The notes under the pieces were generated by a model, which worked only from the letters and a program-made list of their open reading frames with translations, ran no database searches and had not been told where the DNA came from. From positions 124,001-188,000 of IMG/VR virus record IMGVR_UViG_3300005253_001115: DNA of 64,000 nucleotides; one strand, 5' to 3'. Below, one piece after another: positions 9,905 through 53,418 of this stretch. Numbering within the stretch: position 1 is the first letter of the stretch; every line of letters begins with the position of its first letter. The position numbers and the translations under genes were made by a program.

Positions 9905-9919
9905 TTACTTTTCCACCTC

Positions 9920-40192: not shown

Positions 40193-40653
40193 TTCTCTTC
40201 TCCTAGAGCTTCGATTAAGAAATCGTACACTTCTTGCTGCAATCCTGGGTTCTTAGACTCTCTGTTGCCTGCAACATTTAGTGTCTCAATCTTGTACATC
40301 TGGAGAAACTCTCCAAACAGATGAAAAGACTCCTCGCTAAATTCCTCAATCACCAAGCAAGGCTTGTTACTGTCCTTGCACATTCGTCTGGTGGTGTGCG
40401 AGCCGGGAGAGGAGACTCTCCCGAAAATGACAGTGGCATCAGAGTCTACCACATTGTACCGGGTTCGGGGAGCGTATTCGCCAGAAGCCAGCTCGCCTAC
40501 ATCGTACATTTTGGCGTATTCGGGATGATAGCCGTCTTCGGTCTTGAAGCCAAGGGGCATCTTGCCTCCTGTGGGAATACCCAGATATTTGGCTGCCTCT
40601 AAGCCACCTAGGTCCGCCCCGGACTGCGCTCCTGATATGATCTTCTTCAGCAT
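40189..40653 (-). CDS. SLOG-family protein (YpsA/'putative molybdenum carrier')
   Basis: KIISGAQSGADLGGLEAA...TGG..P.GFKTEDG...Y.PRT..NV.DSDATVIF...LNVAGNRES. Confidence 0.85.
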   Translation of the reverse strand: MLKKIISGAQSGADLGGLEAAKYLGIPTGGKMPLGFKTEDGYHPEYAKMYDVGELASGEYAPRTRYNVVDSDATVIFGRVSSPGSHTTRRMCKDSNKPCLVIEEFSEESFHLFGEFLQMYKIETLNVAGNRESKNPGLQQEVYDFLIEALGEEK

Positions 40654-41612
40654 TACTTCTCCTGAGATTTAGCCTGCCGCATGCGGCTGGCAGTACGCTT
40701 ATGTTCCGCTTCAATCTTGTCGATGGTAGCCGGTCGCCCATCAAAGAGATACTTGGTGGGGTTCATGGCCTTGTCACGATCGAAATTGCCTTTGTTGTGG
40801 AAACCCCATTTTCCAAAATGTTCAACATAAGATACAAGACTTGTAACCGCCTTACGTCCCGCGATTTCCCTGGAGTAGAAGCCGTCCCAGCCTCGCCCGT
40901 CCGGCACCTGAACCTTCTTGGGATTGTCCCGGAAACTCTTCATTCGGAAGAACATCGAGATGCCAGCCGCCATGCCACGTACCGAGGTGTATGGGTCGAT
41001 TACTTGGTTCTCGGTTCGTTTGCCACGAGGCGAGTGGAACTTGGCGTTGTAGAGGCAAATTGTACCCCAATTCGGGTACATTTCCATAATCTCGTGAAGA
41101 CGGTAGAAGAAATGTGGATCGTGTAGGCCGTCGCTATCGACGTGATAGAGGTACTCTGGTCCGTCAGGCCCAAAGTCCTCATCGAGCCAGGGCTTGAAGA
41201 TATCCGGCTTGAAATCACCCAGTACGCTCTTGGTAATGTTCGAGCGCAGGTTCTTAACGCCCCGCTTGCCACCCCTGGAGCGCTCGTGCCGGTACACCCG
41301 GTCGCAGAACTGCGCCAGCCACTCCTCGTCATATTCGTCGGAGCCGTCGTCATGGATGTACAGTTTCGCTTCCATCTTGTGGCGGTTCGTAGCCCCGATG
41401 CACATCTCTGCCGTGCCTCGGCGATTGTAGGTAAGAGGCGTGATGAGGGTCTTACGGGAGAGTGCCTTGACAGCTTCGTGATCGTAGTCAGCGAAGTGCG
41501 CAACAGCGTCAAACGGGACAATATATCCCGGCGCATTTGGATCAAACGGAATGGCTATAGACTTCACAGCTCGGGAAGGTGCCGGATTTTTTGGATCGGG
41601 TCTAATTGCCAT
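40653..41612 (-). CDS. GT-A fold (GT2-like) glycosyltransferase
   Basis: TYNRR, IHDDGSD, YLYHVDSDGLH (DxD motif), GWD, SYVEHFG. Confidence 0.75.
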   Translation of the reverse strand: MAIRPDPKNPAPSRAVKSIAIPFDPNAPGYIVPFDAVAHFADYDHEAVKALSRKTLITPLTYNRRGTAEMCIGATNRHKMEAKLYIHDDGSDEYDEEWLAQFCDRVYRHERSRGGKRGVKNLRSNITKSVLGDFKPDIFKPWLDEDFGPDGPEYLYHVDSDGLHDPHFFYRLHEIMEMYPNWGTICLYNAKFHSPRGKRTENQVIDPYTSVRGMAAGISMFFRMKSFRDNPKKVQVPDGRGWDGFYSREIAGRKAVTSLVSYVEHFGKWGFHNKGNFDRDKAMNPTKYLFDGRPATIDKIEAEHKRTASRMRQAKSQEK

Positions 41613-42402
41613 TTCGGTTGTTTTTCCTGTGAAGGGCTAGTGTCAAGGCGAAGACCTCATCTAAGTCGTCTCCCGCTGCGACTACTTTAGGGTAGCTGCG
41701 CATTTTGGCGGGAAAACGATTAGTGAAGGATGCTACGGTTGGCACCCCCAATGCTGCTGCGATGTGGAATCCTCCGCTGTCCGGTCCCACAAACAGACGG
41801 GAGCATTGAATCTCATTCGCCATCTTTAGCATGTGGGAGCGCCCAGGCTCCATGTGGTCCTGCCCCACCATCCTCACGAGAGGGTGCTGCCCGTGGGAAT
41901 CCATGAACTCCATGAAGCGCGAAATGACCCTGCGCCCGGATTCCCATGCCTTGTTGCGGGGCTCCTGTGGGATGTGGAAGGAGATATCGACAGTGGGTGG
42001 GGCCTTGATCTCAGGATGGGAGATCTCCGGGTAGCGGTCATCCTCGGTCCTTACAGGACACATTGTGCCGTCTAGGTAGAGCTTGGGTTGCCTGCGCTCC
42101 AGAGTGACACCGGCAGCCTCCGCAAAAGCGTCGATACCGTGTTGGCCGAAGGGTGCTCGCTCGATTACACCGTGTAGATTTACATGCACATCATACCCCT
42201 CGGGGGTAGGGTCCCAGCAGCCGGTACGAGTACAGAGAATCTCATCAATCAGGGGGTGATAGAGCATCAGGTCGTAAACGTGCCTGTGGGTCCGGTAGGT
42301 AATGTAACAGGGGGCATACTTATCGTGAAGAGCCCGGAGGATGGGCTCTGTCATAAGCATGTCTCCGGCACCACCGAGACGTGTAAGAAGAATTCTAGTC
42401 AC
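41602..42402 (-). CDS. GT9 (ADP-heptose heptosyltransferase-like) glycosyltransferase
   Basis: ILLTRLGGAGDMLMTEPILRAL...HPLIDEI...LFVGPDSGGFHIAAALGVPTV; GTG start at 42402. Confidence 0.85.
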   Translation of the reverse strand: MTRILLTRLGGAGDMLMTEPILRALHDKYAPCYITYRTHRHVYDLMLYHPLIDEILCTRTGCWDPTPEGYDVHVNLHGVIERAPFGQHGIDAFAEAAGVTLERRQPKLYLDGTMCPVRTEDDRYPEISHPEIKAPPTVDISFHIPQEPRNKAWESGRRVISRFMEFMDSHGQHPLVRMVGQDHMEPGRSHMLKMANEIQCSRLFVGPDSGGFHIAAALGVPTVASFTNRFPAKMRSYPKVVAAGDDLDEVFALTLALHRKNNRNGN

Positions 42403-43402
42403 GAAGAGTGCCCACCCAAGAACTTGCAGCCCCGTCAGCAGGAACATCTTCCCCGCTGATAAACTTCATCATCTTTTCCATTTGCTGGTCCCAGCCCCAG
42501 TTGGCGGACCATTCCCAACCCCGTCTTGCGATCTCTAGCCGTTCTTTGCTTTGATCCTTGTCCATCCAGTAACGTGCCTTCTCCAGAAGGTCCGGCACGT
42601 CACCGAAATTGAAGGTTACTAGCTGGTTGCCTTCCTCGAAGGAAGCAGCCACGTCCGTGTTCCTCTCGCTGAGAGCGAAGCCGCTGGAAGTTAGCAGGCG
42701 CACTAGGCGATTTGATGTGATGCCAACAGGGGTATCACCCTCACCCGGAGTACCACACACCATGTTCAGGCAAATGCCGCTGTTGTAGTACAACTTAGAA
42801 GCGTCCTCGTGGAAGATCCGCTTGTTGTGATGTACGCGAAAACCGTTACGCGCGAGAGCGGAAATTTTCGCCCGCCGACCACCGTCCCCTTTGTAGTTCG
42901 CGGACCCCAGAAACGCAATCTGGTCTGGGTTGGTGCGTGGAACATCAAGGTTCTGTGGACGCCAAAGACTGTGGCGACAACCCTGGTATATCTGGGCGAT
43001 TCGCCCCTTGAAGCCGTTGTTTCGGAACCAACGAGCGCCCTCTGATCCTGTCAAGAGGATACGGTCACACAGCAAACCGCGCTTCCCAATCTCATCTGGG
43101 CGACCCGGAGGACCACAGCCATTACCGCTAACGGAATCAAAGGTAAGGTACGTTGTGTCAGGCAGCGCGTTTACTAGGGCTGTGTAGACGCCCAGTGGGA
43201 TTACGGTGCCTTTACCGATTATGGTCGTATCGCAGCCCTCTGCCAGGGATGTTACGTAGTTGACGTAAGAATGGCTCTTGACAAGAGCGTTCTTGTTGGT
43301 CTCGATTTCTACCCATGTATGTCCCCCGGCCCGAAGACCGTCCAGCACACCGTAGATAGTGCTGCGCTTGTCGTTGAACGGGGCCATGATTGCAACCTTC
43401 AT
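42395..43402 (-). CDS. CgeB/DUF3880-like GT-B glycosyltransferase
   Basis: IAFLGS..Y...R...YYNSGICLN...TSNRLVRLLTSSGFALS...EIARRGWE; start MKVAIM, ATGA-coupled to hldD. Confidence 0.75.
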   Translation of the reverse strand: MKVAIMAPFNDKRSTIYGVLDGLRAGGHTWVEIETNKNALVKSHSYVNYVTSLAEGCDTTIIGKGTVIPLGVYTALVNALPDTTYLTFDSVSGNGCGPPGRPDEIGKRGLLCDRILLTGSEGARWFRNNGFKGRIAQIYQGCRHSLWRPQNLDVPRTNPDQIAFLGSANYKGDGGRRAKISALARNGFRVHHNKRIFHEDASKLYYNSGICLNMVCGTPGEGDTPVGITSNRLVRLLTSSGFALSERNTDVAASFEEGNQLVTFNFGDVPDLLEKARYWMDKDQSKERLEIARRGWEWSANWGWDQQMEKMMKFISGEDVPADGAASSWVGTLRD

Positions 43403-44352
43403 AGTCCCAACCTCCTTACATAAGCGTTGATACCTCTCTGTAGGTCGATGAAGGACTGCGTATAGCCCGCGCGCCGCAACTTCGTCATCTCGGCCTTGGT
43501 GTAATACTGGTACTGGTCTCGAATGTCTTCCGGCGTGTCCACCCATACGATCTTGGGAAAGACTTTGAGGGCTTCGAAGGCTTTGATAGCTAGATCTAAG
43601 AAGGGGCTGGATGCGCCTGTACCTAGGTTGTAGATGCCACGCTTCGAGTTGGCAATAGACCAGTGCAGCACCTTCACCACGTCATCGACGTAGATGAAGT
43701 CTCGGGACTGCATACCGTCATCGTACTCTTCGTTGTGTGACCGAAACAGTATCAGCTTCTTTGTTTCCTTGATCTGTTTTAACGCCTGGTACACCATGCT
43801 GGCCATGCGGCCCTTATGGGACTCGCCGTATCCGTAGACGTTGAAGAACTTGAAGCCTGCCCAGCTCGGAGGTACGATACCTCGACGCTCTAATTTCAGA
43901 ACATCTAGGTCGAAGGCGTGCTTGGACATGCCGTAGTGGTTTAGTGGCATCAGGTTCCGCAGGTCGTCTTCGTCGTCCGAGAACGTATCCGCTGCTCCGT
44001 AGGTGGCTGCGCTAGAAGCGTACACGAAGGGAACCAGATACTCGGAAGCGTACTCCCACAGGTCGTGAGAGAAGTCCGTGTTGAGTCTACGAAGCTCGTG
44101 TATGTCGGAAGCTGCGGTGTCCGTAATAGCCCCTAGGTGAATAATGGCATCAATGTGCCGTGGGGCATCATGAAGAAGATGCTGCATGATGTCGTCGGTA
44201 TCAAGCTTCAGACCAAAATCGAGCCCATCGTGGTCTGGTCGGGAGAAATTGGCGAGCTTATCGACAGAGATCAGCTCGATCTTTTCCTTGTTGCAGCTCT
44301 CCACGAACCGGGCTCCGATGAACCCGGCGGCTCCTGTGACTAGGTATCTCAT
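43399..44352 (-). CDS. hldD: ADP-L-glycero-D-manno-heptose 6-epimerase
   Basis: VTGAAGFIG, HLGAITDT, YASSAATYG, PLNHYGMSK, FKFFNVYG..E.HKGRMASMV, QSRDFIYVDD, GIYNLGTG, YQYYTKAEMTKLR.AGY are HldD/RfaD-specific motifs. Confidence 0.92.
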   Translation of the reverse strand: MRYLVTGAAGFIGARFVESCNKEKIELISVDKLANFSRPDHDGLDFGLKLDTDDIMQHLLHDAPRHIDAIIHLGAITDTAASDIHELRRLNTDFSHDLWEYASEYLVPFVYASSAATYGAADTFSDDEDDLRNLMPLNHYGMSKHAFDLDVLKLERRGIVPPSWAGFKFFNVYGYGESHKGRMASMVYQALKQIKETKKLILFRSHNEEYDDGMQSRDFIYVDDVVKVLHWSIANSKRGIYNLGTGASSPFLDLAIKAFEALKVFPKIVWVDTPEDIRDQYQYYTKAEMTKLRRAGYTQSFIDLQRGINAYVRRLGL

Positions 44353-44362
44353 GTCTGTACCT

Positions 44363-44929
44363 TTAGGGTATCTTGTAGAAGCACGCCTGAATATCGTCCA
44401 TGCCGTTCCAGTCCCTGGCCTGGAGAGGCTCTAACGAAAGGCGTGCAACAGTAGCTTCAAGCTGGTCCGGGAATACCTCGACACCGTAATCGTGGGCCGC
44501 GATGACAGACCCCATGGGGAGATGGTCGGCGTAGAAGTTGAACTCATCGACTTTGTTACCGCCGTCGCAGAAAAAGAAAGTGGGGCGATTGTCCATGAGG
44601 TTCGTGATAGCGCCCAGGCACTCCCAGTGATCTTGTGGGGAATTTCGCACGCCCAGGGCGTTGAATACAGGAAGAAGTGGCTCGTGTAGTTCGGGTCTGT
44701 TGTCGTAGGTAAGGAGTCTGTTCCCGCGCTGTACCGCGTGGAGGGCCAAAATCACCGACAGTGCTCCGGCTCCTGTCCCGATCTCCACAAAGCGTTGGAG
44801 CTGAGGGTTGGACGTAACGATGTCGTCAATGACCTTGTAAAGCCAGTACGTGTGCTGCTGACGCTGCCCTAGGAAGGTCTTGTACCATCGCTCTTGCACT
44901 ACCGGGTTGTCTCTGTTGTTGGGCCTCAC
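44363..44929 (-). CDS. Class I SAM-dependent methyltransferase (Methyltransf_24/CmcI-like)
   Basis: FVEIGTGAGALS, FFCDGG, GSVIAAHDY. Confidence 0.75.
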   Translation of the reverse strand: MRPNNRDNPVVQERWYKTFLGQRQQHTYWLYKVIDDIVTSNPQLQRFVEIGTGAGALSVILALHAVQRGNRLLTYDNRPELHEPLLPVFNALGVRNSPQDHWECLGAITNLMDNRPTFFFCDGGNKVDEFNFYADHLPMGSVIAAHDYGVEVFPDQLEATVARLSLEPLQARDWNGMDDIQACFYKIP

Positions 44930-45585
44930 AGCGGAACCGAAATCAAAGCTTCACCCTGCCCGGAAGGTAGGTGTATGTAGAACCAACCCGTGTCCGCAAC
45001 GAATGTCTTAACAGCCGCCGTTACCCCCACCTGTGCCCTATTCCACGGAGCTTCTTCCTTAAAGTCGTCTGCTAGAATGAAGCCGCCGGGACGCACAATG
45101 TCACGGGCAAGATACAGATCGCTGAGGCACCCTTCCTCGCTATGGTCGCCGTCAACGTGTACCAAATCAAAAAGCTCCATAGACTCCGCAAGGACCCGGG
45201 CCTCTGGGCTCAGAGAGTTTACCTCATAAGTAACAACAGTAGCCTCTGGGTACTTGTCTCGGAGAGTGTCTGTGGCGTGGTGCATGAAATTTCTCCTACC
45301 GCCCCAAGGAGCAAGACCCTTAACGCTCTGATTCATGTCCATACCCACATAGGTAGCTGTCGGGCATGCGTACAAAAAGGCCGCTGCCGCGTAGCCTGCC
45401 CGTATTCCTATCTCAAGAATGCGCTTTGGCTGCGTATGCTTGGCAATGGCAGCCTTATAGAGAGTGGATTCGTAAGCATCTGCCTTCCACGTCTTGCCGT
45501 CCGGCCCAGGGGGCTCAGACGGGTGAATGAACGGAGTATAGTCGAAAGTGCAACTTTCCGCACTAGCAATTATTTCTTCTCTCAC
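44926..45585 (-). CDS. Class I SAM-dependent methyltransferase (Methyltransf_24)
   Basis: ILEIGIRAGYAA, FDLVHVDGDHS, PGGFILADD, GVTAAV. Confidence 0.85.
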   Translation of the reverse strand: MREEIIASAESCTFDYTPFIHPSEPPGPDGKTWKADAYESTLYKAAIAKHTQPKRILEIGIRAGYAAAAFLYACPTATYVGMDMNQSVKGLAPWGGRRNFMHHATDTLRDKYPEATVVTYEVNSLSPEARVLAESMELFDLVHVDGDHSEEGCLSDLYLARDIVRPGGFILADDFKEEAPWNRAQVGVTAAVKTFVADTGWFYIHLPSGQGEALISVPL

Positions 45586-46193
45586 TGTGCTTCTCCTTCA
45601 AACCAGAGCATAATTTCGATACCGTTGAGAATCTTATAGCGGGAAGCTCGCGCAGCTAGCTCATCATGTTCATCTAGTTGAACCCTGTGTTCCTTGGCGT
45701 CAGCCCATTTCTTGTCGGAGTAGGGAGCTACGAAAACCACAGCCTCCCTTGCTCGACTCAAACATTTTGGAAGCACGATGTCCATAAGTTGATCTCGTGT
45801 GAAGTGTTCAATCGTATGCGAAGAGAAAACGTAATCGAATGTCTCCACGTCTTCCTTTAGTATATCATGGACCCGAAAATCTATGGACTTGTCCAAACCC
45901 TTTTTGGCCTCCTCCAAAAGGTCCGTGGCCAAAATTGTGCCCAAATTCGATAGGTTACGAATAAGGTTGCAGTGTACTGGGTGCCCCGCTCCGAAAACCC
46001 ACAAGGAACTACCTTCCTTGAATTCGGAAATGGCCTCGTCGTAGTACCGAGGCGGTTTTTTTTCTTCCCCGCCGGGACCACCACGGTACTTCTTACGGTA
46101 GTACGGAAAAGTAGCAGCCTCGGTAGTAGACTCTCTTTCGATCATGCGTTTCAGCGGTTTGCCTGCGTCTTCAGGAATTGGTGTCCACTTCAT
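45582..46193 (-). CDS. Class I SAM-dependent methyltransferase-like protein
   Basis: WVFGAG (variant motif I), ATDL, FDYVFSSHTIEHF, FVAP. Confidence 0.7.
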   Translation of the reverse strand: MKWTPIPEDAGKPLKRMIERESTTEAATFPYYRKKYRGGPGGEEKKPPRYYDEAISEFKEGSSLWVFGAGHPVHCNLIRNLSNLGTILATDLLEEAKKGLDKSIDFRVHDILKEDVETFDYVFSSHTIEHFTRDQLMDIVLPKCLSRAREAVVFVAPYSDKKWADAKEHRVQLDEHDELAARASRYKILNGIEIMLWFEGEAQ

Positions 46194-46819
46194 TTTCGTG
46201 CCCTGAAGCAATAGTGAGAATTCTTTCTCTCGGCACTAATAATCCCAGCATCATACTCGACCTCTGCGCCAAGGGATTCGGCAATAATTTCGGGACTTCT
46301 AACGTTCATGTGACTACATCGTTTTCGGGGAGGGTCTACATCGAAGGCCCATCCTCTATATTTTGGGTGTGCGTCATCAATGATAAGGAACATGCCTCCG
46401 GGTTTCACAACACGGCTAAGCTCTGAAGACCAGATCTTAAACTGTTCTGGTTCTACTATGTGCTGAATGACGGTGATGGCCACAACGGAATCAAATTCGC
46501 CGTCGTCGAAAGGAATTCTGTCATCCGGCAGGGCCACGTAAGATGTACCCTCCAGCTCCGGGGCAAATTTGAAAGCTCCTTCGTTAATGTCGGCTCCAAC
46601 GTAACTATCAGCCCTCTCCATCAGGGCTTCGGCAAAGCGACCCACCCCACACCCAAAATCCAGAACCCTCCCTATACTGGGCGGACAGATTCCCAGGATG
46701 GCGTCCTTGAATACTTCCCACTGCTGGTCTTTTACCGTGGTGCTGTTGCGTGTGGATACGTACAAGGCACCTTGGTTTTCTAGTCTGTCGGCCCACCACT
46801 GTCGGTTATACTCCGCCAT
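46190..46819 (-). CDS. Class I SAM-dependent methyltransferase (Methyltransf_11), paralogue of 51075-51698
   Basis: VLDFGCGVGRF, IPFDDGEFD, VIQHI, RVVKPGG; RBS GGAGG before MAEYNR. Confidence 0.9.
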   Translation of the reverse strand: MAEYNRQWWADRLENQGALYVSTRNSTTVKDQQWEVFKDAILGICPPSIGRVLDFGCGVGRFAEALMERADSYVGADINEGAFKFAPELEGTSYVALPDDRIPFDDGEFDSVVAITVIQHIVEPEQFKIWSSELSRVVKPGGMFLIIDDAHPKYRGWAFDVDPPRKRCSHMNVRSPEIIAESLGAEVEYDAGIISAERKNSHYCFRARK

Positions 46820-47384
46820 ATCCGTAACCTCCCTTTCTAGGTCGGGCAGCATCCACCTTTTCCGCGATGTTCTTAAAGGTGTTTCTGTCCAGACCAAGCC
46901 ACTGTGCTATACCGTCCATAGTGTCGTGAAACTCGCTCATAAGATCTTCGTACCTTACGGTATAGATATCGGACCGGGTTTCCGCAAAACTGAGCCACTT
47001 TTCAACGGCTTCTTTCCAGCACTCATAAGGTGTCATGTATTGCTGGTCTCCTTCGATCCACCTGTTTAGTTGCTCCTGCTTCACTTTTCCGTCCTCTACC
47101 AGCTTGATCCAGGGTGTATTATTGAAAACTTTTGGAGAAATATCGCCGTTAATTCGGGATGACTGGGCTAGAAGAGAAGCTAAAACGTCTTCGTAGTTTC
47201 TCCACACGTACAAAAACCTTTCGTTCTTCTTCTCGAACAGTTTACCCAGAGGCTCGCCTGAGAAGGGAGGAGGCCATCTGTGGTGTTGGTTTCCCCTCTG
47301 TTGCATCGGTCCAAAAGCGTTCACCTCTACGAGATGGCATAGGTAGTGATTGCCGGAGCGCGGGTGGCCGAAGACGTGTATCAT
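46806..47384 (-). CDS. PAPS-dependent sulfotransferase
   Basis: 5'-PSB HPRSGNHYL, 3'-PB LYVWRNYEDVLAS, VRYEDL...IAQWLGL. Confidence 0.8.
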   Translation of the reverse strand: MIHVFGHPRSGNHYLCHLVEVNAFGPMQQRGNQHHRWPPPFSGEPLGKLFEKKNERFLYVWRNYEDVLASLLAQSSRINGDISPKVFNNTPWIKLVEDGKVKQEQLNRWIEGDQQYMTPYECWKEAVEKWLSFAETRSDIYTVRYEDLMSEFHDTMDGIAQWLGLDRNTFKNIAEKVDAARPRKGGYGYGGV

Positions 47385-48178
47385 AGAAGATGGTCCATAA
47401 ATTGGTGAAACGGCTCTGGATTTTCTGTTCTGCTTTTGAAGTACATGGTCAAGTAAGTGACCCATTGAGGAAATAACCGTCCGTAAAATGCTTGGGTGTG
47501 ACCAGAGGTTCTTGTGTACACCACACTAGGAACTTTTTGGCTGAGGGCAACGTAAGCCATTAGTCCCTGTATGCCTATGAACCCCGTGGCTCGGGATACT
47601 ACACCCATGCCCTCTAGTAAAGAGGTTTTCCCTATCAAATTCAACACATTGGGCTTAGTGAAAGTAGAGTACCTGTTAGCCTCCCCCACAAGTACAAAAG
47701 TATGCTTTGGGTACGCTCCGGTCATCCATTCCAATTCTTCATGTATGTCACGATGTCCCTGCTGCGGCTTTCCCGACTTAGGACAACAGGCTATGTAACT
47801 CCCTACTGGTTCGTGTTCTGACACAGGGAAAGTAAACTTCGGGTAGGCTGTCACGGGGGCGATTCCTCTGTTTGCACTCACGATTGGGCTGGGTCTGAAT
47901 CCGGGAGGGTCTCCTCTGACATTAGCTGGACAGGACCCTAGTGTTCTTTTCCACTCCTCGTGGTCTATGAAATTCACGTCTACGTTATGAGAAAGGGAAT
48001 AGATCTTCTCTATAAGGGGAATACCTTGCTGTTGCGTCTCAGGATCGCTACTGATGCACTGGTTGACAGTTATAGGTGTCCGGCTGGGGTCGTATAGTAT
48101 GGCGTTGAACAGGAATGCGTCTCCAATTGATCCTTTGCATACCAGATTCCGAACGTCGAGAGGGGGGCGTCTGCTCAT
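47381..48178 (-). CDS. Divergent GT9-like glycosyltransferase, paralogue of 50323-51075
   Basis: GSIGDAF, FVLVG, NLIGKTSLLE..GVVSRA..FIG...YVA...VPSV. Confidence 0.7.
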   Translation of the reverse strand: MSRRPPLDVRNLVCKGSIGDAFLFNAILYDPSRTPITVNQCISSDPETQQQGIPLIEKIYSLSHNVDVNFIDHEEWKRTLGSCPANVRGDPPGFRPSPIVSANRGIAPVTAYPKFTFPVSEHEPVGSYIACCPKSGKPQQGHRDIHEELEWMTGAYPKHTFVLVGEANRYSTFTKPNVLNLIGKTSLLEGMGVVSRATGFIGIQGLMAYVALSQKVPSVVYTRTSGHTQAFYGRLFPQWVTYLTMYFKSRTENPEPFHQFMDHLL

Positions 48179-48783
48179 AGCGGCTGACCTCCGATCTTCT
48201 CCTTAACGTCAACAAATTCACGGTTTTCCTCTCCGAGCCACGCAGCCATGTCACTCGTCGTTTTCTGAAATGAAGAAACAAGGAGATCGTAGTCCACCAC
48301 ATACACGTCTGTGCGATGAGCGGAGAAGTCTAACCAACTGCTCACATGGTGCTTCCAGTATTCATAAGGTGTCACCTCTGGAGGAGGGAGTGCCGAGGAA
48401 AAAGCACTGCCCGCGCCTCTCTTCGTTTCTCCGTCTATTTTCCACGCCCAGTGAGTTCCAGCTACGTGAAGCTCTCCCCAGGGAGTATCTGAGAACTCGG
48501 TCACTGTCAAATCTGTCCTGTGGATGCCGAACCTACCGGGCATGCGGAGAATAGACTTCGCCACGTCTTCGAACCCACGCCAAATGTAGAGATGTGGCAG
48601 GTCGTTTTCCTTGAAGGTGTTGGGTAAGCCATGCAGGGGGTAAGCCATGGTCTTTCGTCCATTTGCTTCGCGTAGGTGTCCCCAGGCCACTTCCCATATA
48701 CTGGGCTTGTGGATGAAGTTGGCATTCAGCACTGCCATGAGGTAGTGCGTGCCAGAGCGTGGGTGACTGTGAACGTTGTACAT
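48175..48783 (-). CDS. PAPS-dependent sulfotransferase
   Basis: HPRSGTHYL, LYIWRGFEDVAKS, YWKHHVSSW, VDYDLL...AAWLG. Confidence 0.8.
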   Translation of the reverse strand: MYNVHSHPRSGTHYLMAVLNANFIHKPSIWEVAWGHLREANGRKTMAYPLHGLPNTFKENDLPHLYIWRGFEDVAKSILRMPGRFGIHRTDLTVTEFSDTPWGELHVAGTHWAWKIDGETKRGAGSAFSSALPPPEVTPYEYWKHHVSSWLDFSAHRTDVYVVDYDLLVSSFQKTTSDMAAWLGEENREFVDVKEKIGGQPL

Positions 48784-49433
48784 TAACTTTTCGGTAGTGC
48801 TATCAAATAGATGGAATCCTTGTGGATCTTCTCTATGGTGTGGGTAGCTTCCAGTTCGCTAGTGATGAATTCGGAGGTTCCTGGGTTGTCGTAACCACGT
48901 TCCACGTACCAGTTCTTCGAGCCGTTCTTGTCGTACAGTCGCATGTCGTCAATGATAAACACGTCACCGCTGATGTCTCTTTGGGCCTTGATAACGCCCA
49001 GCTCCCTCTCAAGAGGGAAGGCAACGTCTCTATGAAGAAGCTCTGCCGTCGTTGCCTCTTTGTCTTTTTCGAATCTGGCACCCTTCTTCGGTACATGGGC
49101 GTCGAGCCACCACAGAATGTTTCCCTCAGAGATCTCAATAGCCTCGGGGAGCTTGTCCGCAGACTCTCCGTGAATCAGGTTGATGCTGTCGTCTAGCATC
49201 TTACGTTCGGGTGCTCCGGGTGCTGGATCGTGGTGCATTAGACCTATTTCGCCTGCCGATACAATCCACTTGTAGTCTATCTCGACCGCTACGAACTTCT
49301 CGATCCCAGACAGATTAGTAGTGGCCCAAGCCATACTTCGACCGTGTTCCAAACCGGTCTCAACAAGCGTCTTCAGGTTGTACTTGTCAACCCAGAGTTG
49401 GACCGTTAGAGCGTCACTTCCTAAATATCCCAT
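48783..49433 (-). CDS. Methyltransferase-like protein of polysaccharide gene clusters
   Basis: LVETG..HG, AVEID, IHGES...L, WWLDAH, PL..EL..I, IIDD.RL. Confidence 0.65.
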   Translation of the reverse strand: MGYLGSDALTVQLWVDKYNLKTLVETGLEHGRSMAWATTNLSGIEKFVAVEIDYKWIVSAGEIGLMHHDPAPGAPERKMLDDSINLIHGESADKLPEAIEISEGNILWWLDAHVPKKGARFEKDKEATTAELLHRDVAFPLERELGVIKAQRDISGDVFIIDDMRLYDKNGSKNWYVERGYDNPGTSEFITSELEATHTIEKIHKDSIYLIALPKS

Positions 49434-50326
49434 TACGTTCTCCTTTTTGCGGCGTGATAAGCCCTGAAATCCTCAATTTGCGGTAGACCGGCCTCTTCGA
49501 TTACCGGAGGATGCGGACCTTCGTACACATACAAGTTACCCCCACTATCGGGTGTAAAGCCCGGAGTCCAGCAGGGATTTCTGCGCTTGTAGTCTGCACC
49601 GAACAGCTCCATGCTCTTGTCGGTCCAGTAGGCTTCGTTATCTAGCTCAAAAGGCCGATAGATCTGATTCAACCAGTTCCATTTCCTCTGTTGTGCCTCG
49701 AATACGCGACCGGACTGCTGCTTGTATTCAGTCTTCCATTGTCTTTCCTTGTAGTCCTCTGGTGTCAGTAGACTGTAGTGGAACATACCTTTCTGCCCGG
49801 TGTCTCTAACAACATTGCGGTACTCAACCCGAGAATTCCAAGAGCAGGTCGGCAGGAACTTGCCGTTTCGGTCCTTGATTTTGTACAGGCGGTGGTGGGT
49901 GGAATGCAGGTACCTCTCCATATTGATAAAGAAGAACTTAGCGGGAAACTGGATAGTGTCTGCTGTCGGGTCATTCTCGATAATGTCTCTGGCTTCCTGT
50001 AGCGTTTCATCGAAATAAAACTCGTCCACATCCAACATGAACACCCAGTTTCCCGGCTCGTACAGAGTGCTGGCTGCCAGCATATTATTCAATGTCTTGC
50101 ACTTCCCTGTCGCTATGAACCCGTCGTTTATACAAGGCACCAAGGTAATCTTGTCGCCAAATTCTTGGGCCTTGAGCAGGGTAGTATCATGAAGCTCTGC
50201 CAGCAGCGGGGTATGTGCTCCGATGGAAACTATAACTTCGTCACAGAAGCTTAGAGCTTGCTTGATAGACGGACCAATGAAATCCTCAGCGTAATGCGCC
50301 CCGATCAGACCTATGATTTTGTTCAT
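49433..50326 (-). CDS. GT-A fold (GT2-like) glycosyltransferase
   Basis: FCDEVIVSIG, DTT, WVFMLDVDEFY (DxD motif), MFHYS. Confidence 0.75.
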   Translation of the reverse strand: MNKIIGLIGAHYAEDFIGPSIKQALSFCDEVIVSIGAHTPLLAELHDTTLLKAQEFGDKITLVPCINDGFIATGKCKTLNNMLAASTLYEPGNWVFMLDVDEFYFDETLQEARDIIENDPTADTIQFPAKFFFINMERYLHSTHHRLYKIKDRNGKFLPTCSWNSRVEYRNVVRDTGQKGMFHYSLLTPEDYKERQWKTEYKQQSGRVFEAQQRKWNWLNQIYRPFELDNEAYWTDKSMELFGADYKRRNPCWTPGFTPDSGGNLYVYEGPHPPVIEEAGLPQIEDFRAYHAAKRRT

Positions 50327-51075
50327 ATCATGAACCTCTTGAACGCCAACGGGTCTTCCGATCGGCAGGTTTTGACTACAGAACAGTATCTCTCCCATTC
50401 AGGGAATAGGCGAGATCGAAACGCTTTATCGTACCCCACCGATTTGGTGTAAACAAAACTGGGGACCTTGGAACTGGCTGCGACGTACACCATCAATCCC
50501 TGTACGCCGATGAATTTTTTGGCTCGGGATACAATTCCGATAGCTTCCAAAATTGAAGTCTTTCCTATCAAGTTCGTCACATTATGGCGGGAATAGCCAA
50601 GGAATTCTGGATTGTCACCCACGAGAACGAACTGCTGGTCTTTGTACTCCTCGATTAGGGAGGATATCTCATCCTCCCCCACCTGTCTGTGTCCCTCGTT
50701 TGATTTCCCGCCACGGGGAGAGCAGGCGATGTAGCTTCCTGTCACCTGTTTCGTTGCGGGGAACTTAAACGGTGGGTGTGGGTTCATTACGCTCATCCCA
50801 CCCTCTCTTTCTCTTGCTTTTTCTATGGACGGCCAGAGGCGAGGAAATTTCTGCGAAGGTAGACTGTTAAACTCTTCTTTGTTAACGAATTCCACCTGAA
50901 TTTTTGGCATAAGAGAATAGATCTGCCGGATATGCGGCTCCCAATGGTCTACAGCATTGCCAGCGTAATCGCTGCACTGCTTGATAAGGATCTTCTCGCG
51001 ACTCGCTAACCCGTGAACTACACAGTTAACGATGTACGAGTCCCCAAGTGTTCCTCTGCACTTAAACGTTTTCAT
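50323..51075 (-). CDS. Divergent GT9-like glycosyltransferase
   Basis: GTLGDSY, FVLVG, NLIGKTSILEAIGIVSRAKKFIG...YVAASSKVPSFV. Confidence 0.7.
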   Translation of the reverse strand: MKTFKCRGTLGDSYIVNCVVHGLASREKILIKQCSDYAGNAVDHWEPHIRQIYSLMPKIQVEFVNKEEFNSLPSQKFPRLWPSIEKAREREGGMSVMNPHPPFKFPATKQVTGSYIACSPRGGKSNEGHRQVGEDEISSLIEEYKDQQFVLVGDNPEFLGYSRHNVTNLIGKTSILEAIGIVSRAKKFIGVQGLMVYVAASSKVPSFVYTKSVGYDKAFRSRLFPEWERYCSVVKTCRSEDPLAFKRFMI

Positions 51076-51698
51076 TAGACTTTCCTTGATCGGAACAAGT
51101 AGTGAGAATTAGGCCGCTCGGCGCTGATGACTCCGAAATCCTCATCAATTACCGAACCCAGAGACTCGCTTATGACTTGGGGACCACGGATCTTCATGTG
51201 TTTACCCATCTTAGGGCTCTGATCTGCGTCATCAATGATGTAGATAAGGCCACCGGGCTTAACTACCCGGGCGATTTCGCTGGACCAGATAACGTAGTGC
51301 TCGGGGTCAACAATGTGCTGGAGAACGGTGAGGGCCATAGCGGAATCGAAGCTATTGTCCTCGAAGGGAATACGGTCCTCTGGCAGACCGACGAACTCCA
51401 CGTTCGGGAGATCGGGGGCATGCTCGAAAGCGCCTGAGTTGATATCGACGCCTACGTAGCTAGAAGCGAACTCCCTAGCCGCCGCAGCAAAGCGACCTAC
51501 ACCGCAGCCAAAGTCGATAATGCGCCCCGGGTCAGTACCCTCCATGGCCTGCCTGAGGGAGTCTCGGAAGACTTCCCACTGGTGGTCATTCACTGTCTTG
51601 CTGTTTCGCGTGGACACATATAGGGCACCCTCCTTCTTCAGGCGAGCAGGCCAGTATTCCCTGGCGATGTACGGGTTTTTTCGCAGGTCAGTGCTCAT
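51075..51698 (-). CDS. Class I SAM-dependent methyltransferase (Methyltransf_11)
   Basis: IIDFGCGVGRF, IPFEDNSFD, VLQHI, RVVKPGG. Confidence 0.9.
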   Translation of the reverse strand: MSTDLRKNPYIAREYWPARLKKEGALYVSTRNSKTVNDHQWEVFRDSLRQAMEGTDPGRIIDFGCGVGRFAAAAREFASSYVGVDINSGAFEHAPDLPNVEFVGLPEDRIPFEDNSFDSAMALTVLQHIVDPEHYVIWSSEIARVVKPGGLIYIIDDADQSPKMGKHMKIRGPQVISESLGSVIDEDFGVISAERPNSHYLFRSRKV

Positions 51699-52528
51699 GT
51701 CTTTGTCCAATGCTTAATGGGGGTTTCTGGGTTCATTCTGGCCACACAGCTATTGAAGGATAAGTCCACGTTAGGGGTTGGAACGTCGATGAACGTGACT
51801 GGGGTATTGAAGGGGTTCCAGTAGCTAAGGTAGCGTTCCATAGAAACTACGGGACGCCCGTACCAAGAGACGTGAGGTGTGCCGCAAGCACTAGCAAGAT
51901 GTAATGTCCCGCTGCTGGGTCCGATAGCAACTTTAGCCGCAGACAAGGCTCCACACAGGTCTCCCAGACCAACTCCTCTGAAGTCTACCGTACCTTCGAT
52001 GTACACGTTGTCAGTGCCTCCGTAACAGGCCACAGAATACCCGGCGTCTAGAAGACGTTTGACCAGACCTTCGCATTTGTCCCGTGGATACTCCTTTTCC
52101 GGGTAAGATCGTTTGCGGTACTTCTTCGGACCACGGAAGGCGCACATGATGTCTGCAACATGCTTGGGCCTCTCTGACCCCAGCTTCCTCCATTCTTTGG
52201 GGTGAATACCGTCCACCTTATCAGCCACCTTGATGGCCTTGAACTCTTTCTTGGCGTGGGCTTTCCAGAACCACATAGGGGTAATTGACCTCGTTCCCGC
52301 AGGAGGCTGGAAGGCAGGCTTGGACACTTTGCCAGAGTACATGTCGAAGTCCGGCAAGTGCGGATTTATGATGATCTCGTCCGCAAACTCGTACAAGTAT
52401 TCGCTGTCGGGCTGTGTCTCCACAATGACATGATCGTAGTCCTTAGCGATGTGCCGGATAGACGGGCTCCACGAGGCGATCTCCCACCCGAACTCTCCTA
52501 CCCAAGGCCCTGCGTACAGTTTCTTCAC
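51695..52528 (-). CDS. GT9-like glycosyltransferase
   Basis: GPWVGEFGWE N-terminus; K.YP...LV..L, DFRG..LGDL...AIGPSSGTLHLASACGTPHV. Confidence 0.7.
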   Translation of the reverse strand: MKKLYAGPWVGEFGWEIASWSPSIRHIAKDYDHVIVETQPDSEYLYEFADEIIINPHLPDFDMYSGKVSKPAFQPPAGTRSITPMWFWKAHAKKEFKAIKVADKVDGIHPKEWRKLGSERPKHVADIMCAFRGPKKYRKRSYPEKEYPRDKCEGLVKRLLDAGYSVACYGGTDNVYIEGTVDFRGVGLGDLCGALSAAKVAIGPSSGTLHLASACGTPHVSWYGRPVVSMERYLSYWNPFNTPVTFIDVPTPNVDLSFNSCVARMNPETPIKHWTKT

Positions 52529-53418
52529 GTCTTGTCTCCGAGCATGTAGTCCAGCCTGTGCGCAGCCGTGTCCCTACTTCGATACAGCTCTGTACCCCAG
52601 TTGCGAATTCTTGCCACCTCCCCAGGATTCTCTAAGTAGTAGCTGGCCAGTTCTCGGGCCTCCTGTGGAGTCTTAAACCACACCAGATGTTTCTTGTTCT
52701 CGAACAGCTTCTCGATTCCGGGGAACCAGTTCACCAACGCGAAACCGTTGGAACTAAGGATATTGTACAGGCGGTTCGAGGTGTACCCTTTGGCGGGTAG
52801 TGATATGGACAAGGACACGGGAGACATAGCATACAGGTACTTCTGGTCCTTGGTTAGACCCTCTCTGTTGATGATCTTGACAGGGTGTTCTTTCCTGATC
52901 TCTTCGATAATAGGGGAGCGGTTTCCGTGAAACTCCCTGGCACTAATCAACGCCTTCAATTTGTCCGTGTCTGTCGGGTTTGAAGCCTCGAACGCGCTAC
53001 CTGGTCGTACTATCCCAAGGAACAGGATGTCCTCATCGAACTTCCTTCCGTTTTTGACATCGGCATCGTTTCCGCACTGCGGGAGGTAGTAGGCTGGCTT
53101 ACCAAAATGCTCAGCGTAGGCATCCGTGAACAACTGGTTGCATACAAACATTTCGGAAGCAGTTGTGCCGGATGTGATGATCTTCGGGTCCCGCAAATCG
53201 CACATCCACCACAGTATTTTGGCAGAAGTCTGGAAAGTCGGTGGGGTATTCATGAAGTACACGATGACATCGTAGTCGTCCCAACTCTTACCGCCAGGGG
53301 CAATGCCTTCCTTGCCCTTGGGCATCTCCAGCACATCAAAGCCTTTTGCCTTGGCGGCGATGGCTAGGGATGCTTGGATGGGACCGATAGGGAGTCTGTA
53401 CGCCACTGCTACTTTCAC
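52525..53418 (-). CDS. CgeB/DUF3880-like GT-B glycosyltransferase
   Basis: WWMCD.R, YLPQC, DILFLG, YTSNRLYNILSSNGFAL..FPGIE.LF...HLVWF...YYLENP. Confidence 0.8.
   Translation of the reverse strand: MKVAVAYRLPIGPIQASLAIAAKAKGFDVLEMPKGKEGIAPGGKSWDDYDVIVYFMNTPPTFQTSAKILWWMCDLRDPKIITSGTTASEMFVCNQLFTDAYAEHFGKPAYYLPQCGNDADVKNGRKFDEDILFLGIVRPGSAFEASNPTDTDKLKALISAREFHGNRSPIIEEIRKEHPVKIINREGLTKDQKYLYAMSPVSLSISLPAKGYTSNRLYNILSSNGFALVNWFPGIEKLFENKKHLVWFKTPQEARELASYYLENPGEVARIRNWGTELYRSRDTAAHRLDYMLGDKT

What the first reader, a model, noticed from the sequence alone, without database searches (positions are those of the whole stretch)
41602..52528. Four diverged GT9-like transferases served by one HldD, two with a TibC-like G(T/S)(L/I)GD motif
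Seen: 41602-42402 is a canonical GT9 (GGAGD...DSG..H.AAALG.P). 47381-48178 and 50323-51075 keep the N-terminal GxxGD (GSIGD, GTLGD), but the DSG/H motif is replaced by FIG(I/V)QGLM. 51695-52528 has GEFGWE and PSSGTLH. All four are about 250-280 aa, shorter than typical WaaC/WaaF. Established: the Asp of GD is the catalytic base in WaaC; protein heptosyltransferases of the Aah/TibC family have a similar GTLGD. Inference: these paralogues have different donors or acceptors, and some may be protein O-heptosyltransferases. Diverting ADP-heptose could also alter host LPS.
Basis: partly seen in the sequence, partly recalled or inferred. Interest (0 to 1): 0.65.

Follow-up and report, generated by a model that had tools for sequence, protein, structure and literature searches.

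The report
Phage glycan island with mini-GT9 transferases
A 267-kb phage from marine sediment carries a 15-kb block of sugar-building genes, including four unusually short relatives of bacterial heptose transferases; two of them belong to a large, mostly viral family that standard domain libraries miss, and what they decorate is still unknown.

Summary

The window is part of a 266.6-kb phage record. It holds seven GT9-like domains and an HldC-like adenylyltransferase. The four ORFs lie in a roughly 20-gene island of 9 glycosyltransferases, 8 methyltransferases and 2 sulfotransferases. None of these proteins has a membrane segment. Related phages conserve the island.

The TibC reading is only partly supported. 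GxxGD is a general GT9 motif, and the beta-barrel and iron finger that define TibC are absent. ORF4 homologues in bacteria sit in an LPS-core-like locus.

My best reading is a cytoplasmic assembly line for a methylated, sulfated, heptose-containing glycan. The acceptor is unresolved; I lean towards a phage protein, with host glycolipid as the close rival. This is a new variant of a known kind.

The parts
40653..41612 (-). 319-aa putative GT2-like glycosyltransferase at the downstream edge of the island
   Evidence: Weak Pfam Glycos_transf_2 match (E 0.0017, below cut-off). Orthologues 67-71% identical sit at the same position in L007 and L012.
41602..42402 (-). ORF1: 266-aa short GT9 glycosyltransferase with RLGGAGD and GPDSGGFHIAAALGVP
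   Evidence: PF01075 31 bits. 3TOV aligns at both the N-terminal and the C-terminal motif. GTG start overlaps the upstream stop. 27 homologues of about 265 aa.
42395..43546 (-). Glyco_trans_1_2 (GT4-like C-lobe) glycosyltransferase; the true start is probably near 43400
   Evidence: PF13524 39.5 bits. The longest ORF overlaps HldD by 148 nt; the homologue in L007 is 326 aa.
43399..44352 (-). HldD, ADP-glycero-manno-heptose 6-epimerase (317 aa)
   Evidence: TIGR02197 307.4 bits, above the cut-off of 274.6. PF01370 1e-38 range.
44363..46897 (-). Four consecutive SAM-methyltransferase genes (44363-44929, 44926-45585, 45582-46211, 46190-46897)
   Evidence: Pfam Methyltransf_24 and Methyltransf_11/25/12/23. 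The first (E 0.0014) and third (E 0.0069) score below the gathering cut-offs.
46806..47465 (-). Sulfotransferase (PAPS-type), directly downstream of ORF2
   Evidence: PF00685 41.4 bits; confirmed by the genome scan.
47381..48178 (-). ORF2: 265-aa member of the GTLGD family (GSIGD ... FIGIQGLM), flanked by two sulfotransferases
   Evidence: 39% identical to ORF3 and aligned in A1. No Pfam hit. The ST-ORF2-ST order recurs in L007.
48175..48783 (-). Second sulfotransferase
   Evidence: PF00685 28.7 bits.
48783..49433 (-). 216-aa acidic protein of unknown function inside the island
   Evidence: No significant Pfam, PHROG or NCBIfam match.
49433..50398 (-). 321-aa weak GT2-like protein; its family travels with ORF3-like genes in distant phages
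   Evidence: Glyco_tranf_2_4 and GT2 at E 0.005-0.02. 41% and 29% identical homologues lie beside ORF3-like genes in L077 and L081.
50323..51075 (-). ORF3: 250-aa GTLGD-family GT-B enzyme (GTLGD ... SPRGGK ... E177 ... FIGVQGLM)
51075..51710 (-). SAM-methyltransferase (211 aa)
   Evidence: Methyltransf_11 62.4 bits.
51695..52528 (-). ORF4: 277-aa GT9-like enzyme of the GPWVGEFGWE family, with Glu12 at the catalytic-base position and GPSSGTLHLASACGTPHV
52525..53418 (-). Second Glyco_trans_1_2 glycosyltransferase (297 aa)
   Evidence: PF13524 51.2 bits.
53415..53855 (-). Short methyltransferase-like protein (146 aa)
   Evidence: Methyltransf_11 24.7 bits.
53852..54688 (-). GT2 (GT-A) glycosyltransferase (278 aa)
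   Evidence: Glyco_trans_2_3 36.8 bits and other GT2 models. PHROG glycosyltransferase families also match.
54672..55265 (-). TylF-type sugar O-methyltransferase at the upstream edge of the island
   Evidence: PF05711 71.1 bits. 69% identical orthologue next to PhoH in L007.

Best explanation
The region is the core of a phage-encoded glycan-assembly island (window 40653-55265, about 20 co-directional and tightly packed genes). ORF1, ORF2, ORF3 and ORF4 are four miniaturised GT-B glycosyltransferases of the GT9 lineage and fall into three sub-families.

Each keeps a carboxylate at the end of the first beta-strand loop: Asp in ORF1, ORF2 and ORF3, and Glu in ORF4. I infer that this residue is the general base that activates an acceptor hydroxyl, as Asp13 does in WaaC and Asp110 in TibC. 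Each also keeps a nucleotide-sugar-binding C-lobe. The acceptor-binding N-lobe is cut to 3-4 strands.

I infer the following pathway:
- ORF1 and ORF4 keep the (D/S)SG..H donor motif. They transfer heptose from ADP-L-glycero-D-manno-heptose.
- The phage tops up this donor with its own HldD, and with an HldC-like adenylyltransferase encoded elsewhere, starting from host heptose-1-phosphate.
- ORF2 and ORF3 have (Q/E)G..(F/Y) in place of DSG..H. They use the same or a different nucleotide sugar. Their product is handled by the adjacent sulfotransferases.
- Together with five further glycosyltransferases, eight methyltransferases and two sulfotransferases, they build a methylated, sulfated, heptose-containing oligosaccharide step by step in the host cytoplasm.

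The acceptor is not known. I think a phage (virion) protein is slightly more likely than a host lipid-linked core.
For: Shown:
- Fold and family placement.
- Conservation of the catalytic carboxylate and of the phosphate and ribose positions. In 79 diverse family members G11, D12, G123 and G193 are 100% conserved, K/R124 and R/K130 are conserved, and position 177 is E or D in 77%. In the ORF4 family E12 is conserved in at least 90%, and PWVGE aligns with WaaF SWVGD.
- HldD scores above the equivalog cut-off.
- The HldC-like protein scores 151 bits on TIGR02199, against 49 bits for the next family.
- Relatives carry a PfkB kinase and a cytidylyltransferase-like gene inside the same island.
- Island composition.
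- The island is conserved in order between PhoH and DnaB in two other large phage contigs.
- ORF3-like, ORF4-like and GT2-like genes lie within 3 kb of each other in distant IMG/VR phages.
- GTLGD genes are adjacent to sulfotransferases in 3 of 4 occurrences examined, and one protein is a fusion of the two.

Pointing to a soluble, non-exported acceptor (inference):
- No island protein has a 19-residue hydrophobic window above 1.74, and the only window above 1.62 lies in a spurious N-terminal extension.
- The four membrane-like ORFs of the whole record match no Wzx, Wzy, WaaL or phosphoglycosyl-transferase family.
- The same genome encodes a 938-aa methyltransferase-GT2-TPR-GT9 fusion.
- The nearest clusters in the ESM Atlas are viral and include TPR, GT2 and methyltransferase fusions.
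Against: - No biochemical evidence exists for donor or acceptor.
- ORF4's bacterial homologues include one (30-33% identical) that sits between a GT4 and an ordinary GT9. That locus also holds a WaaL-like ligase and a KpsF-like isomerase, so it looks like an LPS-core locus.
- LPS-core glycosyltransferases are themselves soluble or peripheral. The lack of membrane genes therefore does not exclude a lipid acceptor that the host machinery exports.
- The island lies in the replication module (PhoH ... DnaB), not among structural genes.
- The phage lacks GmhA, HldA and GmhB and an APS kinase. Donor supply therefore depends on an unknown host.
- ORF2 and ORF3 lack the Asp and His of the GT9 donor motif, so heptose is not assured for them.
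- The HldC-like protein is below its equivalog cut-off (151 against 181.5 bits).
Confidence: 0.5

Rival explanations
1. Host-envelope remodelling. The island acts on a lipid-linked acceptor, either lipid A-Kdo core or another glycolipid, at the inner face of the membrane. The host MsbA/Lpt machinery exports the altered molecule. This changes the cell surface during infection, for example to block superinfection or to prevent progeny from being trapped.
For: - The ORF4 family occurs in 57 loci of cellular genomes.
- In Methylophilaceae the homologue lies in a locus with a KpsF-like SIS/CBS protein, ELM1, GT4, an ordinary GT9 (62 bits) and a WaaL-like Wzy_C protein.
- The island lies next to early and replication genes.
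- GT9 is by origin an LPS-core family.
Against: - Nine glycosyltransferases, eight methyltransferases and two sulfotransferases are far more than known surface-conversion modules need (own knowledge).
- The N-lobes are about 60 residues shorter than the lipid A-Kdo-binding N-lobe of WaaC and WaaF.
- NCBIfam WaaC, WaaF and WaaQ scores are 13-41 bits, against cut-offs of 135-185.
- The other cellular contexts are not LPS-core-like: multi-GT fusions in Acidobacteriota and a Big_2 surface protein in Fibrobacteria.
Confidence: 0.3
2. ORF2 and ORF3 are TibC/Aah-type protein O-heptosyltransferases (members of the BAHT family) that hyper-heptosylate a beta-helical protein such as a tail fibre.
For: - Foldseek ranks TibC chains first for the ORF3 model (E 3e-7).
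- The structural alignment starts at TibC residue 98, so D12 falls at or next to the catalytic Asp110.
- TibC's N-lobe is also reduced to a four-stranded sheet (PMC4358343). The ORF3 model has 3-4 N-lobe strands.
- One viral structural neighbour is annotated Aah/TibC.
Against: - TM-scores to TibC are 0.45-0.50 normalised by the query and 0.31-0.35 by the target.
- There is no beta-barrel, thumb or iron finger.
- The three conserved Cys of the close family (C6, C18, C34) lie in the N-lobe and are not conserved in the wider family.
- GxxGD is general to GT9.
- Profile searches with the ORF2/3 family find no TibC sequence match.
Confidence: 0.12
3. ORF2 and ORF3 are not heptosyltransferases. They keep the GT9-like fold but transfer another sugar, or bind another adenine nucleotide such as PAPS/PAP as partners of the sulfotransferases.
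For: - The Asp and His of the GT9 D(S/T)G..H motif are replaced by Q/E and F/Y throughout the family.
- Only 5 of 79 members touch PF01075.
- The family is tightly adjacent to sulfotransferases and is fused to one in P0207.
Against: - The catalytic Asp is invariant (79 of 79). The Gly of the phosphate loop and a basic residue after it are conserved, as expected for an active transferase.
- The nearest structures are all ADP-heptose enzymes.
- HldD lies in the same island.
Confidence: 0.3
4. The island glycosylates phage DNA (hypermodified bases), as T4-type GT-B glucosyltransferases do.
For: - The island is located in the replication and nucleotide-metabolism module.
- GT-B enzymes are used for DNA glucosylation in T-even phages (own knowledge).
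Against: - The record holds no ThyA-like pyrimidine hydroxymethylase, only ThyX.
- TylF, Methyltransf_24 and sulfotransferase families are sugar or small-molecule tailoring enzymes.
- Nothing in the structural matches points to DNA-modifying glycosyltransferases.
Confidence: 0.04

Closest known systems
LPS inner-core heptosyltransferases WaaC, WaaF and WaaQ and the GT9 protein of Veillonella (CAZy GT9, Pfam PF01075; PDB 2H1H, 1PSW, 3TOV)
   Same: - A carboxylate after the first strand (GxxGD, or PWVGE in ORF4).
- A basic residue after the C-lobe's first strand.
- A Glu or Asp before the donor motif.
- ORF1 and ORF4 keep (D/S)SG..H.AAA.G.P.
   Different: - 250-277 aa instead of 320-350 aa, with the N-lobe cut to 3-4 strands.
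- Scores lie far below the WaaC, WaaF and WaaQ equivalog cut-offs.
- ORF2 and ORF3 replace DSG..H by (Q/E)G..(F/Y) and are missed by Pfam.
- ORF4 uses Glu instead of Asp as the presumed base.
- The genes are phage-encoded, in an island with methyl- and sulfotransferases.
Bacterial autotransporter heptosyltransferases TibC and Aah (BAHT family; PDB 4RAP, 4RB4; PMC4358343)
   Same: - GT9-like catalytic core.
- A reduced N-lobe.
- A catalytic Asp at the equivalent place.
- Use of ADP-heptose.
- Top Foldseek rank for ORF3.
   Different: - No N-terminal beta-barrel, beta-hairpin thumb or four-Cys iron finger.
- About 150 residues shorter.
- Lower Z than WaaC and WaaF (12.7-14.6).
- No autotransporter substrate gene.
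- Oligomeric state unknown.
Glycan-building gene sets of giant viruses (chlorovirus capsid glycans, mimivirus fibril glycans) and glycosylated mycobacteriophage virions (own knowledge, not tested here)
   Same: - Virus-encoded soluble glycosyltransferases plus sugar methyltransferases, with no export machinery.
- Multi-domain GT-methyltransferase fusions.
- Structural neighbours of ORF3 occur in PBCV-1, EhV-86, Catovirus and Klosneuvirus.
   Different: - The host is a bacterium.
- The chemistry is heptose/ADP-sugar with sulfotransferases.
- No demonstrated glycoprotein product.
'LPS' gene clusters of T4-like cyanophages (own knowledge); uncharacterised GT9-like proteins of Synechococcus phages S-SM2, S-T4 and S-SRM01
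   Same: - Phage-borne clusters of glycosyltransferases of unknown target.
- Structurally similar short GT9-like proteins (Foldseek E 4e-6 to 6e-4).
   Different: - No sequence-level relatives among 50,697 GenBank phage records for ORF4. ORF3 gives only weak Vibrio-phage hits.
- This island is larger and adds HldD and sulfotransferases.

Membership tests
GT9 (Pfam PF01075 / CAZy GT9) | Score above the Pfam gathering threshold (22 bits) | tested here: inconclusive
   ORF1 scores 31 bits and ORF4 24.3 bits, so both pass. ORF2 and ORF3 have no hit in hmmscan and reach only 11 bits (E 0.02-0.03) in the genome scan. Only 5 of 79 members of the ORF2/3 family match at E<=0.01.
GT9 (Pfam PF01075 / CAZy GT9) | GT-B fold that is closest to solved GT9 structures | tested here: met
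   [not shown]
GT9 (Pfam PF01075 / CAZy GT9) | Catalytic Asp at the end of the first strand loop (WaaC Asp13) | tested here: met
   ORF1 has GGAGD, ORF2 GSIGD and ORF3 GTLGD. The Asp is invariant in 79 of 79 family members. ORF4 has Glu12, which aligns with WaaF Asp13, a conservative variant.
GT9 (Pfam PF01075 / CAZy GT9) | C-lobe donor motif D(S/T)G..H.AAA.G.P | tested here: inconclusive
   ORF1 has PDSGGFHIAAALGVP (met). ORF4 has PSSGTLHLASACGTP, with Asp changed to Ser. ORF2 and ORF3 have (I/V)QGLM.YVA...VP, with Asp changed to Gln and His to Tyr according to hhalign, so they do not meet it.
WaaC / WaaF / WaaQ equivalogs (NCBIfam TIGR02193, TIGR02195, TIGR02201) | Score above the equivalog cut-off (134.6-185.3 bits) and a full-length N-lobe | tested here: not met
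   The best scores are 40.7 bits (ORF1), 15.5 (ORF4), 13.3 (ORF3) and none (ORF2). The proteins are 50-100 residues shorter.
WaaC / WaaF / WaaQ equivalogs | Acceptor is Kdo2-lipid A or heptosyl-Kdo2-lipid A | not testable with these tools
   Needs an enzyme assay. The only context clue is the LPS-core-like locus of a bacterial ORF4 homologue.
BAHT (TibC/Aah protein heptosyltransferases) | N-terminal beta-barrel domain (TibC residues 1-97) | tested here: not met
   The models begin with the first Rossmann strand. Structural alignments start at TibC residue 96-98. The feature is defined in PMC4358343.
BAHT (TibC/Aah protein heptosyltransferases) | Iron-finger insertion with four conserved Cys (C339, C342, C358, C370) and a beta-hairpin thumb | tested here: not met
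   No insertion is present in the C-lobe of either model (secondary structure). The C-lobe has no conserved Cys quartet.
BAHT (TibC/Aah protein heptosyltransferases) | Catalytic Asp110 equivalent and a reduced four-stranded N-lobe | tested here: met
   D12 of ORF3 maps to about residue 109-110 from the alignment ranges. The N-lobes have 3-4 strands. This is a resemblance shared with the other short viral GT9-like proteins.
BAHT (TibC/Aah protein heptosyltransferases) | Dodecameric ring; autotransporter substrate | not tested
   No oligomer prediction was run, and no autotransporter gene was seen in the window.
HldD (ADP-L-glycero-D-manno-heptose 6-epimerase) | TIGR02197 equivalog score above the cut-off | tested here: met
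   307.4 bits against 274.6, full length 4-315 of 317 aa.
HldC (heptose-1-phosphate adenylyltransferase, TIGR02199) | Equivalog-domain score above 181.5 bits | tested here: not met
   151 bits (E 1.8e-44). It is the best family by 100 bits over glycerol-3-phosphate cytidylyltransferase, so it is HldC-like but below the cut-off.

The most novel reading that the evidence does not exclude
The GTLGD family (ORF2 and ORF3) has at least 336 clusters at 50% identity. It was found only in viral or virus-like contigs so far, and Pfam misses it. Together with the GPWVGEFGWE family (ORF4), it forms the conserved core of a phage 'glycan factory' that decorates virion proteins with a sulfated, O-methylated heptoglycan. 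This would be a bacterial-virus counterpart of the self-encoded glycosylation of giant viruses, and sulfated glycans would be a chemistry not described for any phage particle.
Probability: 0.25. Interest if true: 0.8.

Novelty: new variant of a known kind. Interest (0 to 1): 0.5.

Why it matters
If the reading is right, large environmental phages carry complete toolkits for building chemically elaborate glycans containing heptose, methyl ethers and sulfate esters, with enzymes trimmed to about three quarters of the bacterial size.

- The ORF2/3 family gives annotators a new handle: hundreds of metagenomic 'hypothetical proteins' become GT9-like transferases.
- The short enzymes show how small a GT-B heptosyltransferase can be.
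- Whether the product coats the virion or the host envelope bears on phage adsorption, immune and defence evasion, and particle stability in sediments.
- The HldC and HldD genes also show a phage investing in the ADP-heptose pool.

Tried and rejected
- Sequence-profile searches of the ORF2/3 family against PDB found only a chance SMC1A match or nothing.
- PHROG scans of the four ORFs found nothing.
- Megablast of the island against GenBank phages found nothing. tblastn with ORF4 found nothing, and ORF3 gave only weak Vibrio-phage hits (23% identity, E 5e-3).
- Pattern scans of 185,579 species genomes with ORF2/3 family motifs found no relative. This reaches only close relatives. A first attempt with the broad alignment failed for lack of conserved stretches.
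- My first choice of ORFs in the high-GC Stella locus gave no Pfam hits and was uninformative.
- WaaL and GT9 positions in five cellular genomes showed no adjacency to the ORF4 homologue, apart from a cluster 30-40 kb away in one Fibrobacteria genome.
- Literature searches for phage heptosyltransferase, sulfotransferase or virion-glycosylation clusters found nothing relevant.
- I rejected DNA glycosylation because no hydroxymethylase is present.
- I rejected an exported Wzx/Wzy-type polysaccharide because no membrane or export genes are present.
- I did not run complex prediction (no specific binding claim) or read laying (no RNA runs; the holders are marine sediment DNA).
- I could not check TibC's own N-terminal motif letters, because no tool returned that part of its sequence.

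Full report
**Setting**

The window is bases 124001-188000 of a 266,640-bp IMG/VR virus record that CheckV rates 89% complete. All long ORFs lie on the minus strand. PHROG matches identify a tailed phage: tail-fibre pieces, DnaB-like helicase, a sliding-clamp-like protein and a PhoH/terminase-like ATPase. Near-identical DNA occurs in marine-sediment metagenomes from three studies, and no RNA run holds it. GenBank phages hold no close relative.

**Checking the observation**

This GTG overlaps the upstream stop (GTGACTAG), and homologues of about 265 aa begin there.
- The lengths are 266, 265, 250 and 277 aa. WaaC and WaaF chains are 326 and 348 aa.
- ORF1 and ORF4 pass the Pfam GT9 threshold (31 and 24.3 bits against 22) but match only the C-lobe.
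- ORF2 and ORF3 have no Pfam, PHROG or NCBIfam assignment and only 11-bit traces of GT9. They are 39% identical to each other.
- The epimerase at 43399-44352 is HldD by NCBI's own cut-off (TIGR02197, 307.4 against 274.6 bits).

**Are ORF2 and ORF3 GT9-like?**

- A 21-sequence alignment (A1) gave an AlphaFold model with pLDDT 92.7 and pTM 0.90.
- Foldseek against PDB ranks TibC chains first (E 3e-7, TM 0.45-0.50 by query). WaaF, 3TOV and WaaC follow.
- Sequence support grows with sampling. An exhaustive HMM search finds 336 clusters, mostly of 200-250 aa. A profile of 79 diverse members matches the ORF1/GT9 profile at 83.6% probability (E 8e-6) across the donor motif. Five of the 79 members touch PF01075.
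- One IMG/VR gene (L082 9695-10375) hits both ORF1 (3e-10) and ORF3 (7e-9) by BLAST.

The family therefore belongs to the GT9 lineage but lies outside the Pfam model. Its hallmarks are:

- G-T-L-G-D, with the Gly and Asp invariant in all 79 members.
- An invariant Gly followed by K/R in the first C-lobe loop.
- Glu or Asp at position 177.
- (Q/E)-G at positions 192-193 and F/Y at position 197. hhalign places the last three on the Asp, Ser and His of D-S-G..H.

**ORF4**

- Its family is larger and includes cellular members.
- The conserved N-terminus is AGPWVGEFGWEL and the C-lobe motif is GPSSG..HLASLCGTPHV.
- The family profile hits only GT9 structures in PDB: WaaF 3e-4, 3TOV 6e-4, WaaC 0.02 and TibC 0.055.
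- HMMER aligns PWVGE with WaaF's SWVGD. Glu12, not the later W-E, is therefore the likely base.
- The model (pLDDT 92.4) was compared with all 48,161 representative chains. It ranks 3TOV at 17.5, WaaF at 17.0, WaaC at 15.7 and TibC at 14.6.
- hhalign against the ORF1/GT9 profile gives 96.6% probability.

**ORF1**

It aligns with 3TOV at both motifs. It has two longer paralogues elsewhere in the genome (35% and 27% identity), one of which carries a methyltransferase domain.

**Context in the window**

From 40653 to 55265 the genes are packed head to tail:

- GT2-like, ORF1, Glyco_trans_1_2, HldD
- four methyltransferases
- sulfotransferase, ORF2, sulfotransferase
- an unknown protein, GT2-like, ORF3, methyltransferase
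- ORF4, Glyco_trans_1_2, a short methyltransferase, GT2, TylF methyltransferase

No protein in the island has a transmembrane-grade hydrophobic stretch.

**Elsewhere in the genome**

- A 938-aa methyltransferase-GT2-TPR-GT9 fusion.
- An HldC-like adenylyltransferase (151 bits on TIGR02199).
- No GmhA, HldA, GmhB and no APS kinase or ThyA-like hydroxymethylase.
- The record has only four membrane-like ORFs, and none matches an export, ligase or polymerase family.

**Conservation**

- Two contigs of 129 and 194 kb in one NCBI assembly carry the same island between PhoH and DnaB. Orthologues are 37-76% identical.
- A 190-kb contig and a 48-kb contig hold a looser version that includes a PfkB kinase and a cytidylyltransferase-like gene, the steps before HldD.
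- In distant IMG/VR phages, ORF3-like, ORF4-like and GT2-like genes stay within 3 kb of each other.
- GTLGD genes sit beside sulfotransferases in the window and twice in L007. P0207 is a sulfotransferase-GTLGD fusion.
- ESM-Atlas and BFVD neighbours of ORF3 are almost all viral. They are short GT9-like proteins, fusions with GT2, GT1, FkbM methyltransferase or TPR, and proteins of cyanophages and giant viruses.

**The TibC question**

According to PMC4358343, TibC is defined by:

- a beta-barrel (residues 1-97);
- a GT-B-like core whose N-lobe has only four strands;
- a beta-hairpin thumb;
- a four-Cys iron finger;
- a dodecameric ring;
- Asp110 as the catalytic base.

The phage proteins share only the core, the trimmed N-lobe and the Asp. 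GxxGD is common to ordinary GT9 proteins. They therefore work like small GT9 enzymes and are not BAHT members. That does not exclude a protein acceptor.

**Acceptor**

For a cytoplasmic, non-exported acceptor such as a virion protein:

- all the enzymes are soluble;
- the phage encodes no export genes;
- TPR fusions occur in the same genome and in related viral clusters;
- the N-lobes are trimmed;
- giant viruses and mycobacteriophages provide precedent (own knowledge).

For a lipid-linked host acceptor:

- a Methylophilaceae ORF4 homologue lies in an LPS-core-like locus with a KpsF-like gene, ELM1, GT4, an ordinary GT9 and a WaaL-like gene;
- the island lies among replication genes;
- LPS-core glycosyltransferases need no export genes of their own.

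Other cellular contexts are mixed. In Acidobacteriota the domain ends a 770-810-aa multi-GT protein flanked by GT2 and O-FucT-like genes. In a Fibrobacteria genome it precedes a Big_2 surface protein. I put the virion-protein reading slightly ahead but regard the question as open.

**Verdict**

- The functional inference is partly supported.
- The feature is a new variant of a known kind. It consists of three short GT9-derived families, one of which Pfam does not detect, embedded in a conserved phage glycan island with heptose-nucleotide, methylation and sulfation enzymes.
- Donor and acceptor assignments are inference.

Noticed in passing
G000:C1:77675-80491 (+), outside the window (L011:1676-4492): A 938-aa single protein with methyltransferase, GT2, TPR and GT9-like domains in that order. 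TPR next to glycosyltransferase domains suggests recognition of a protein substrate.
   Followed up: partly
G000:C1:30948-31361 (+), outside the window (L009:2949-3362): A 137-aa HldC-like heptose-1-phosphate adenylyltransferase (TIGR02199 151 bits, below the 181.5 cut-off). It lies 135 kb from HldD. The kinase, isomerase and phosphatase of the pathway are absent from the record.
   Followed up: yes
G000:C1:114504-115631 (-) and 117456-118595 (-) (L010:6505-7632 and 9457-10596): Two more ORF1 paralogues (35% and 27% identical) with C-terminal extensions of about 120 aa. The second carries a methyltransferase domain, and its GxxGD and His are degenerate (STDD; SWATQ).
   Followed up: partly
window 46806-48783; L007 4191-6090 and 10001-11415; L014 748-2184: GTLGD-family genes are repeatedly flanked by sulfotransferase genes, and in one metagenomic protein (P0207, 478 aa) they are fused to one.
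   Followed up: partly
L028 1852-12601 (Methylophilaceae MAG); same layout in L045: A bacterial ORF4 homologue lies in an LPS-core-like locus: KpsF-like SIS/CBS, ELM1-family protein, GT4, the ORF4 homologue, an ordinary GT9, a WaaL-like Wzy_C protein and a TPR protein.
   Followed up: partly
L016 6519-8825, L018 6390-8825, L019 6408-8822, L021 6495-8825 (Acidobacteriota MAGs): The closest cellular ORF4 relatives (43-45% identity) are the C-terminal third of 768-811-aa proteins with a weak N-terminal GT2 signal. GT2 and O-FucT-like genes lie beside them.
   Followed up: partly
window 55240-56991 (-) and 32770-35715 (-): Two composite ATPases. One is a 583-aa protein with a terminase/DnaC-like N-terminal part and a PhoH C-terminal part. 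The other is a 981-aa protein with a terminase-like N-terminal part and a DNA helicase.
   Followed up: no
window 12141-14951, 15765-18584, 21756-23840, 25269-28790 (-): Four proteins of 694-1173 aa without any PHROG match. They are presumably virion or injected proteins and are candidates for a glycan acceptor.
   Followed up: no
window 40189-40653 (-): A cpYpsA (circularly permuted YpsA SLOG) protein lies between the island and DnaB (PF12694 122.9 bits). It is conserved at the same place in L007 and L012.
   Followed up: no
L010 2337-3899 (-) = G000:C1:110336-111898: A 520-aa protein with an IS1/IS1595-type N-terminal zinc-binding domain in the phage genome. A RecD2/TraA-like helicase and a VWA protein lie beside it.
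   Followed up: no
L056 8001-8726 (Methylophilales BACL14 MAG): tblastn finds an ORF4-like match here, but my ORF caller found no intact ORF of 70 aa or more over it. It may be a pseudogene or an assembly problem.
   Followed up: no
L013 12799-16834 (190-kb contig): In this distant relative the glycan island, with PfkB, a cytidylyltransferase-like gene, DegT and a cupin, lies a few small genes upstream of a gene for a 4403-aa protein.
   Followed up: no
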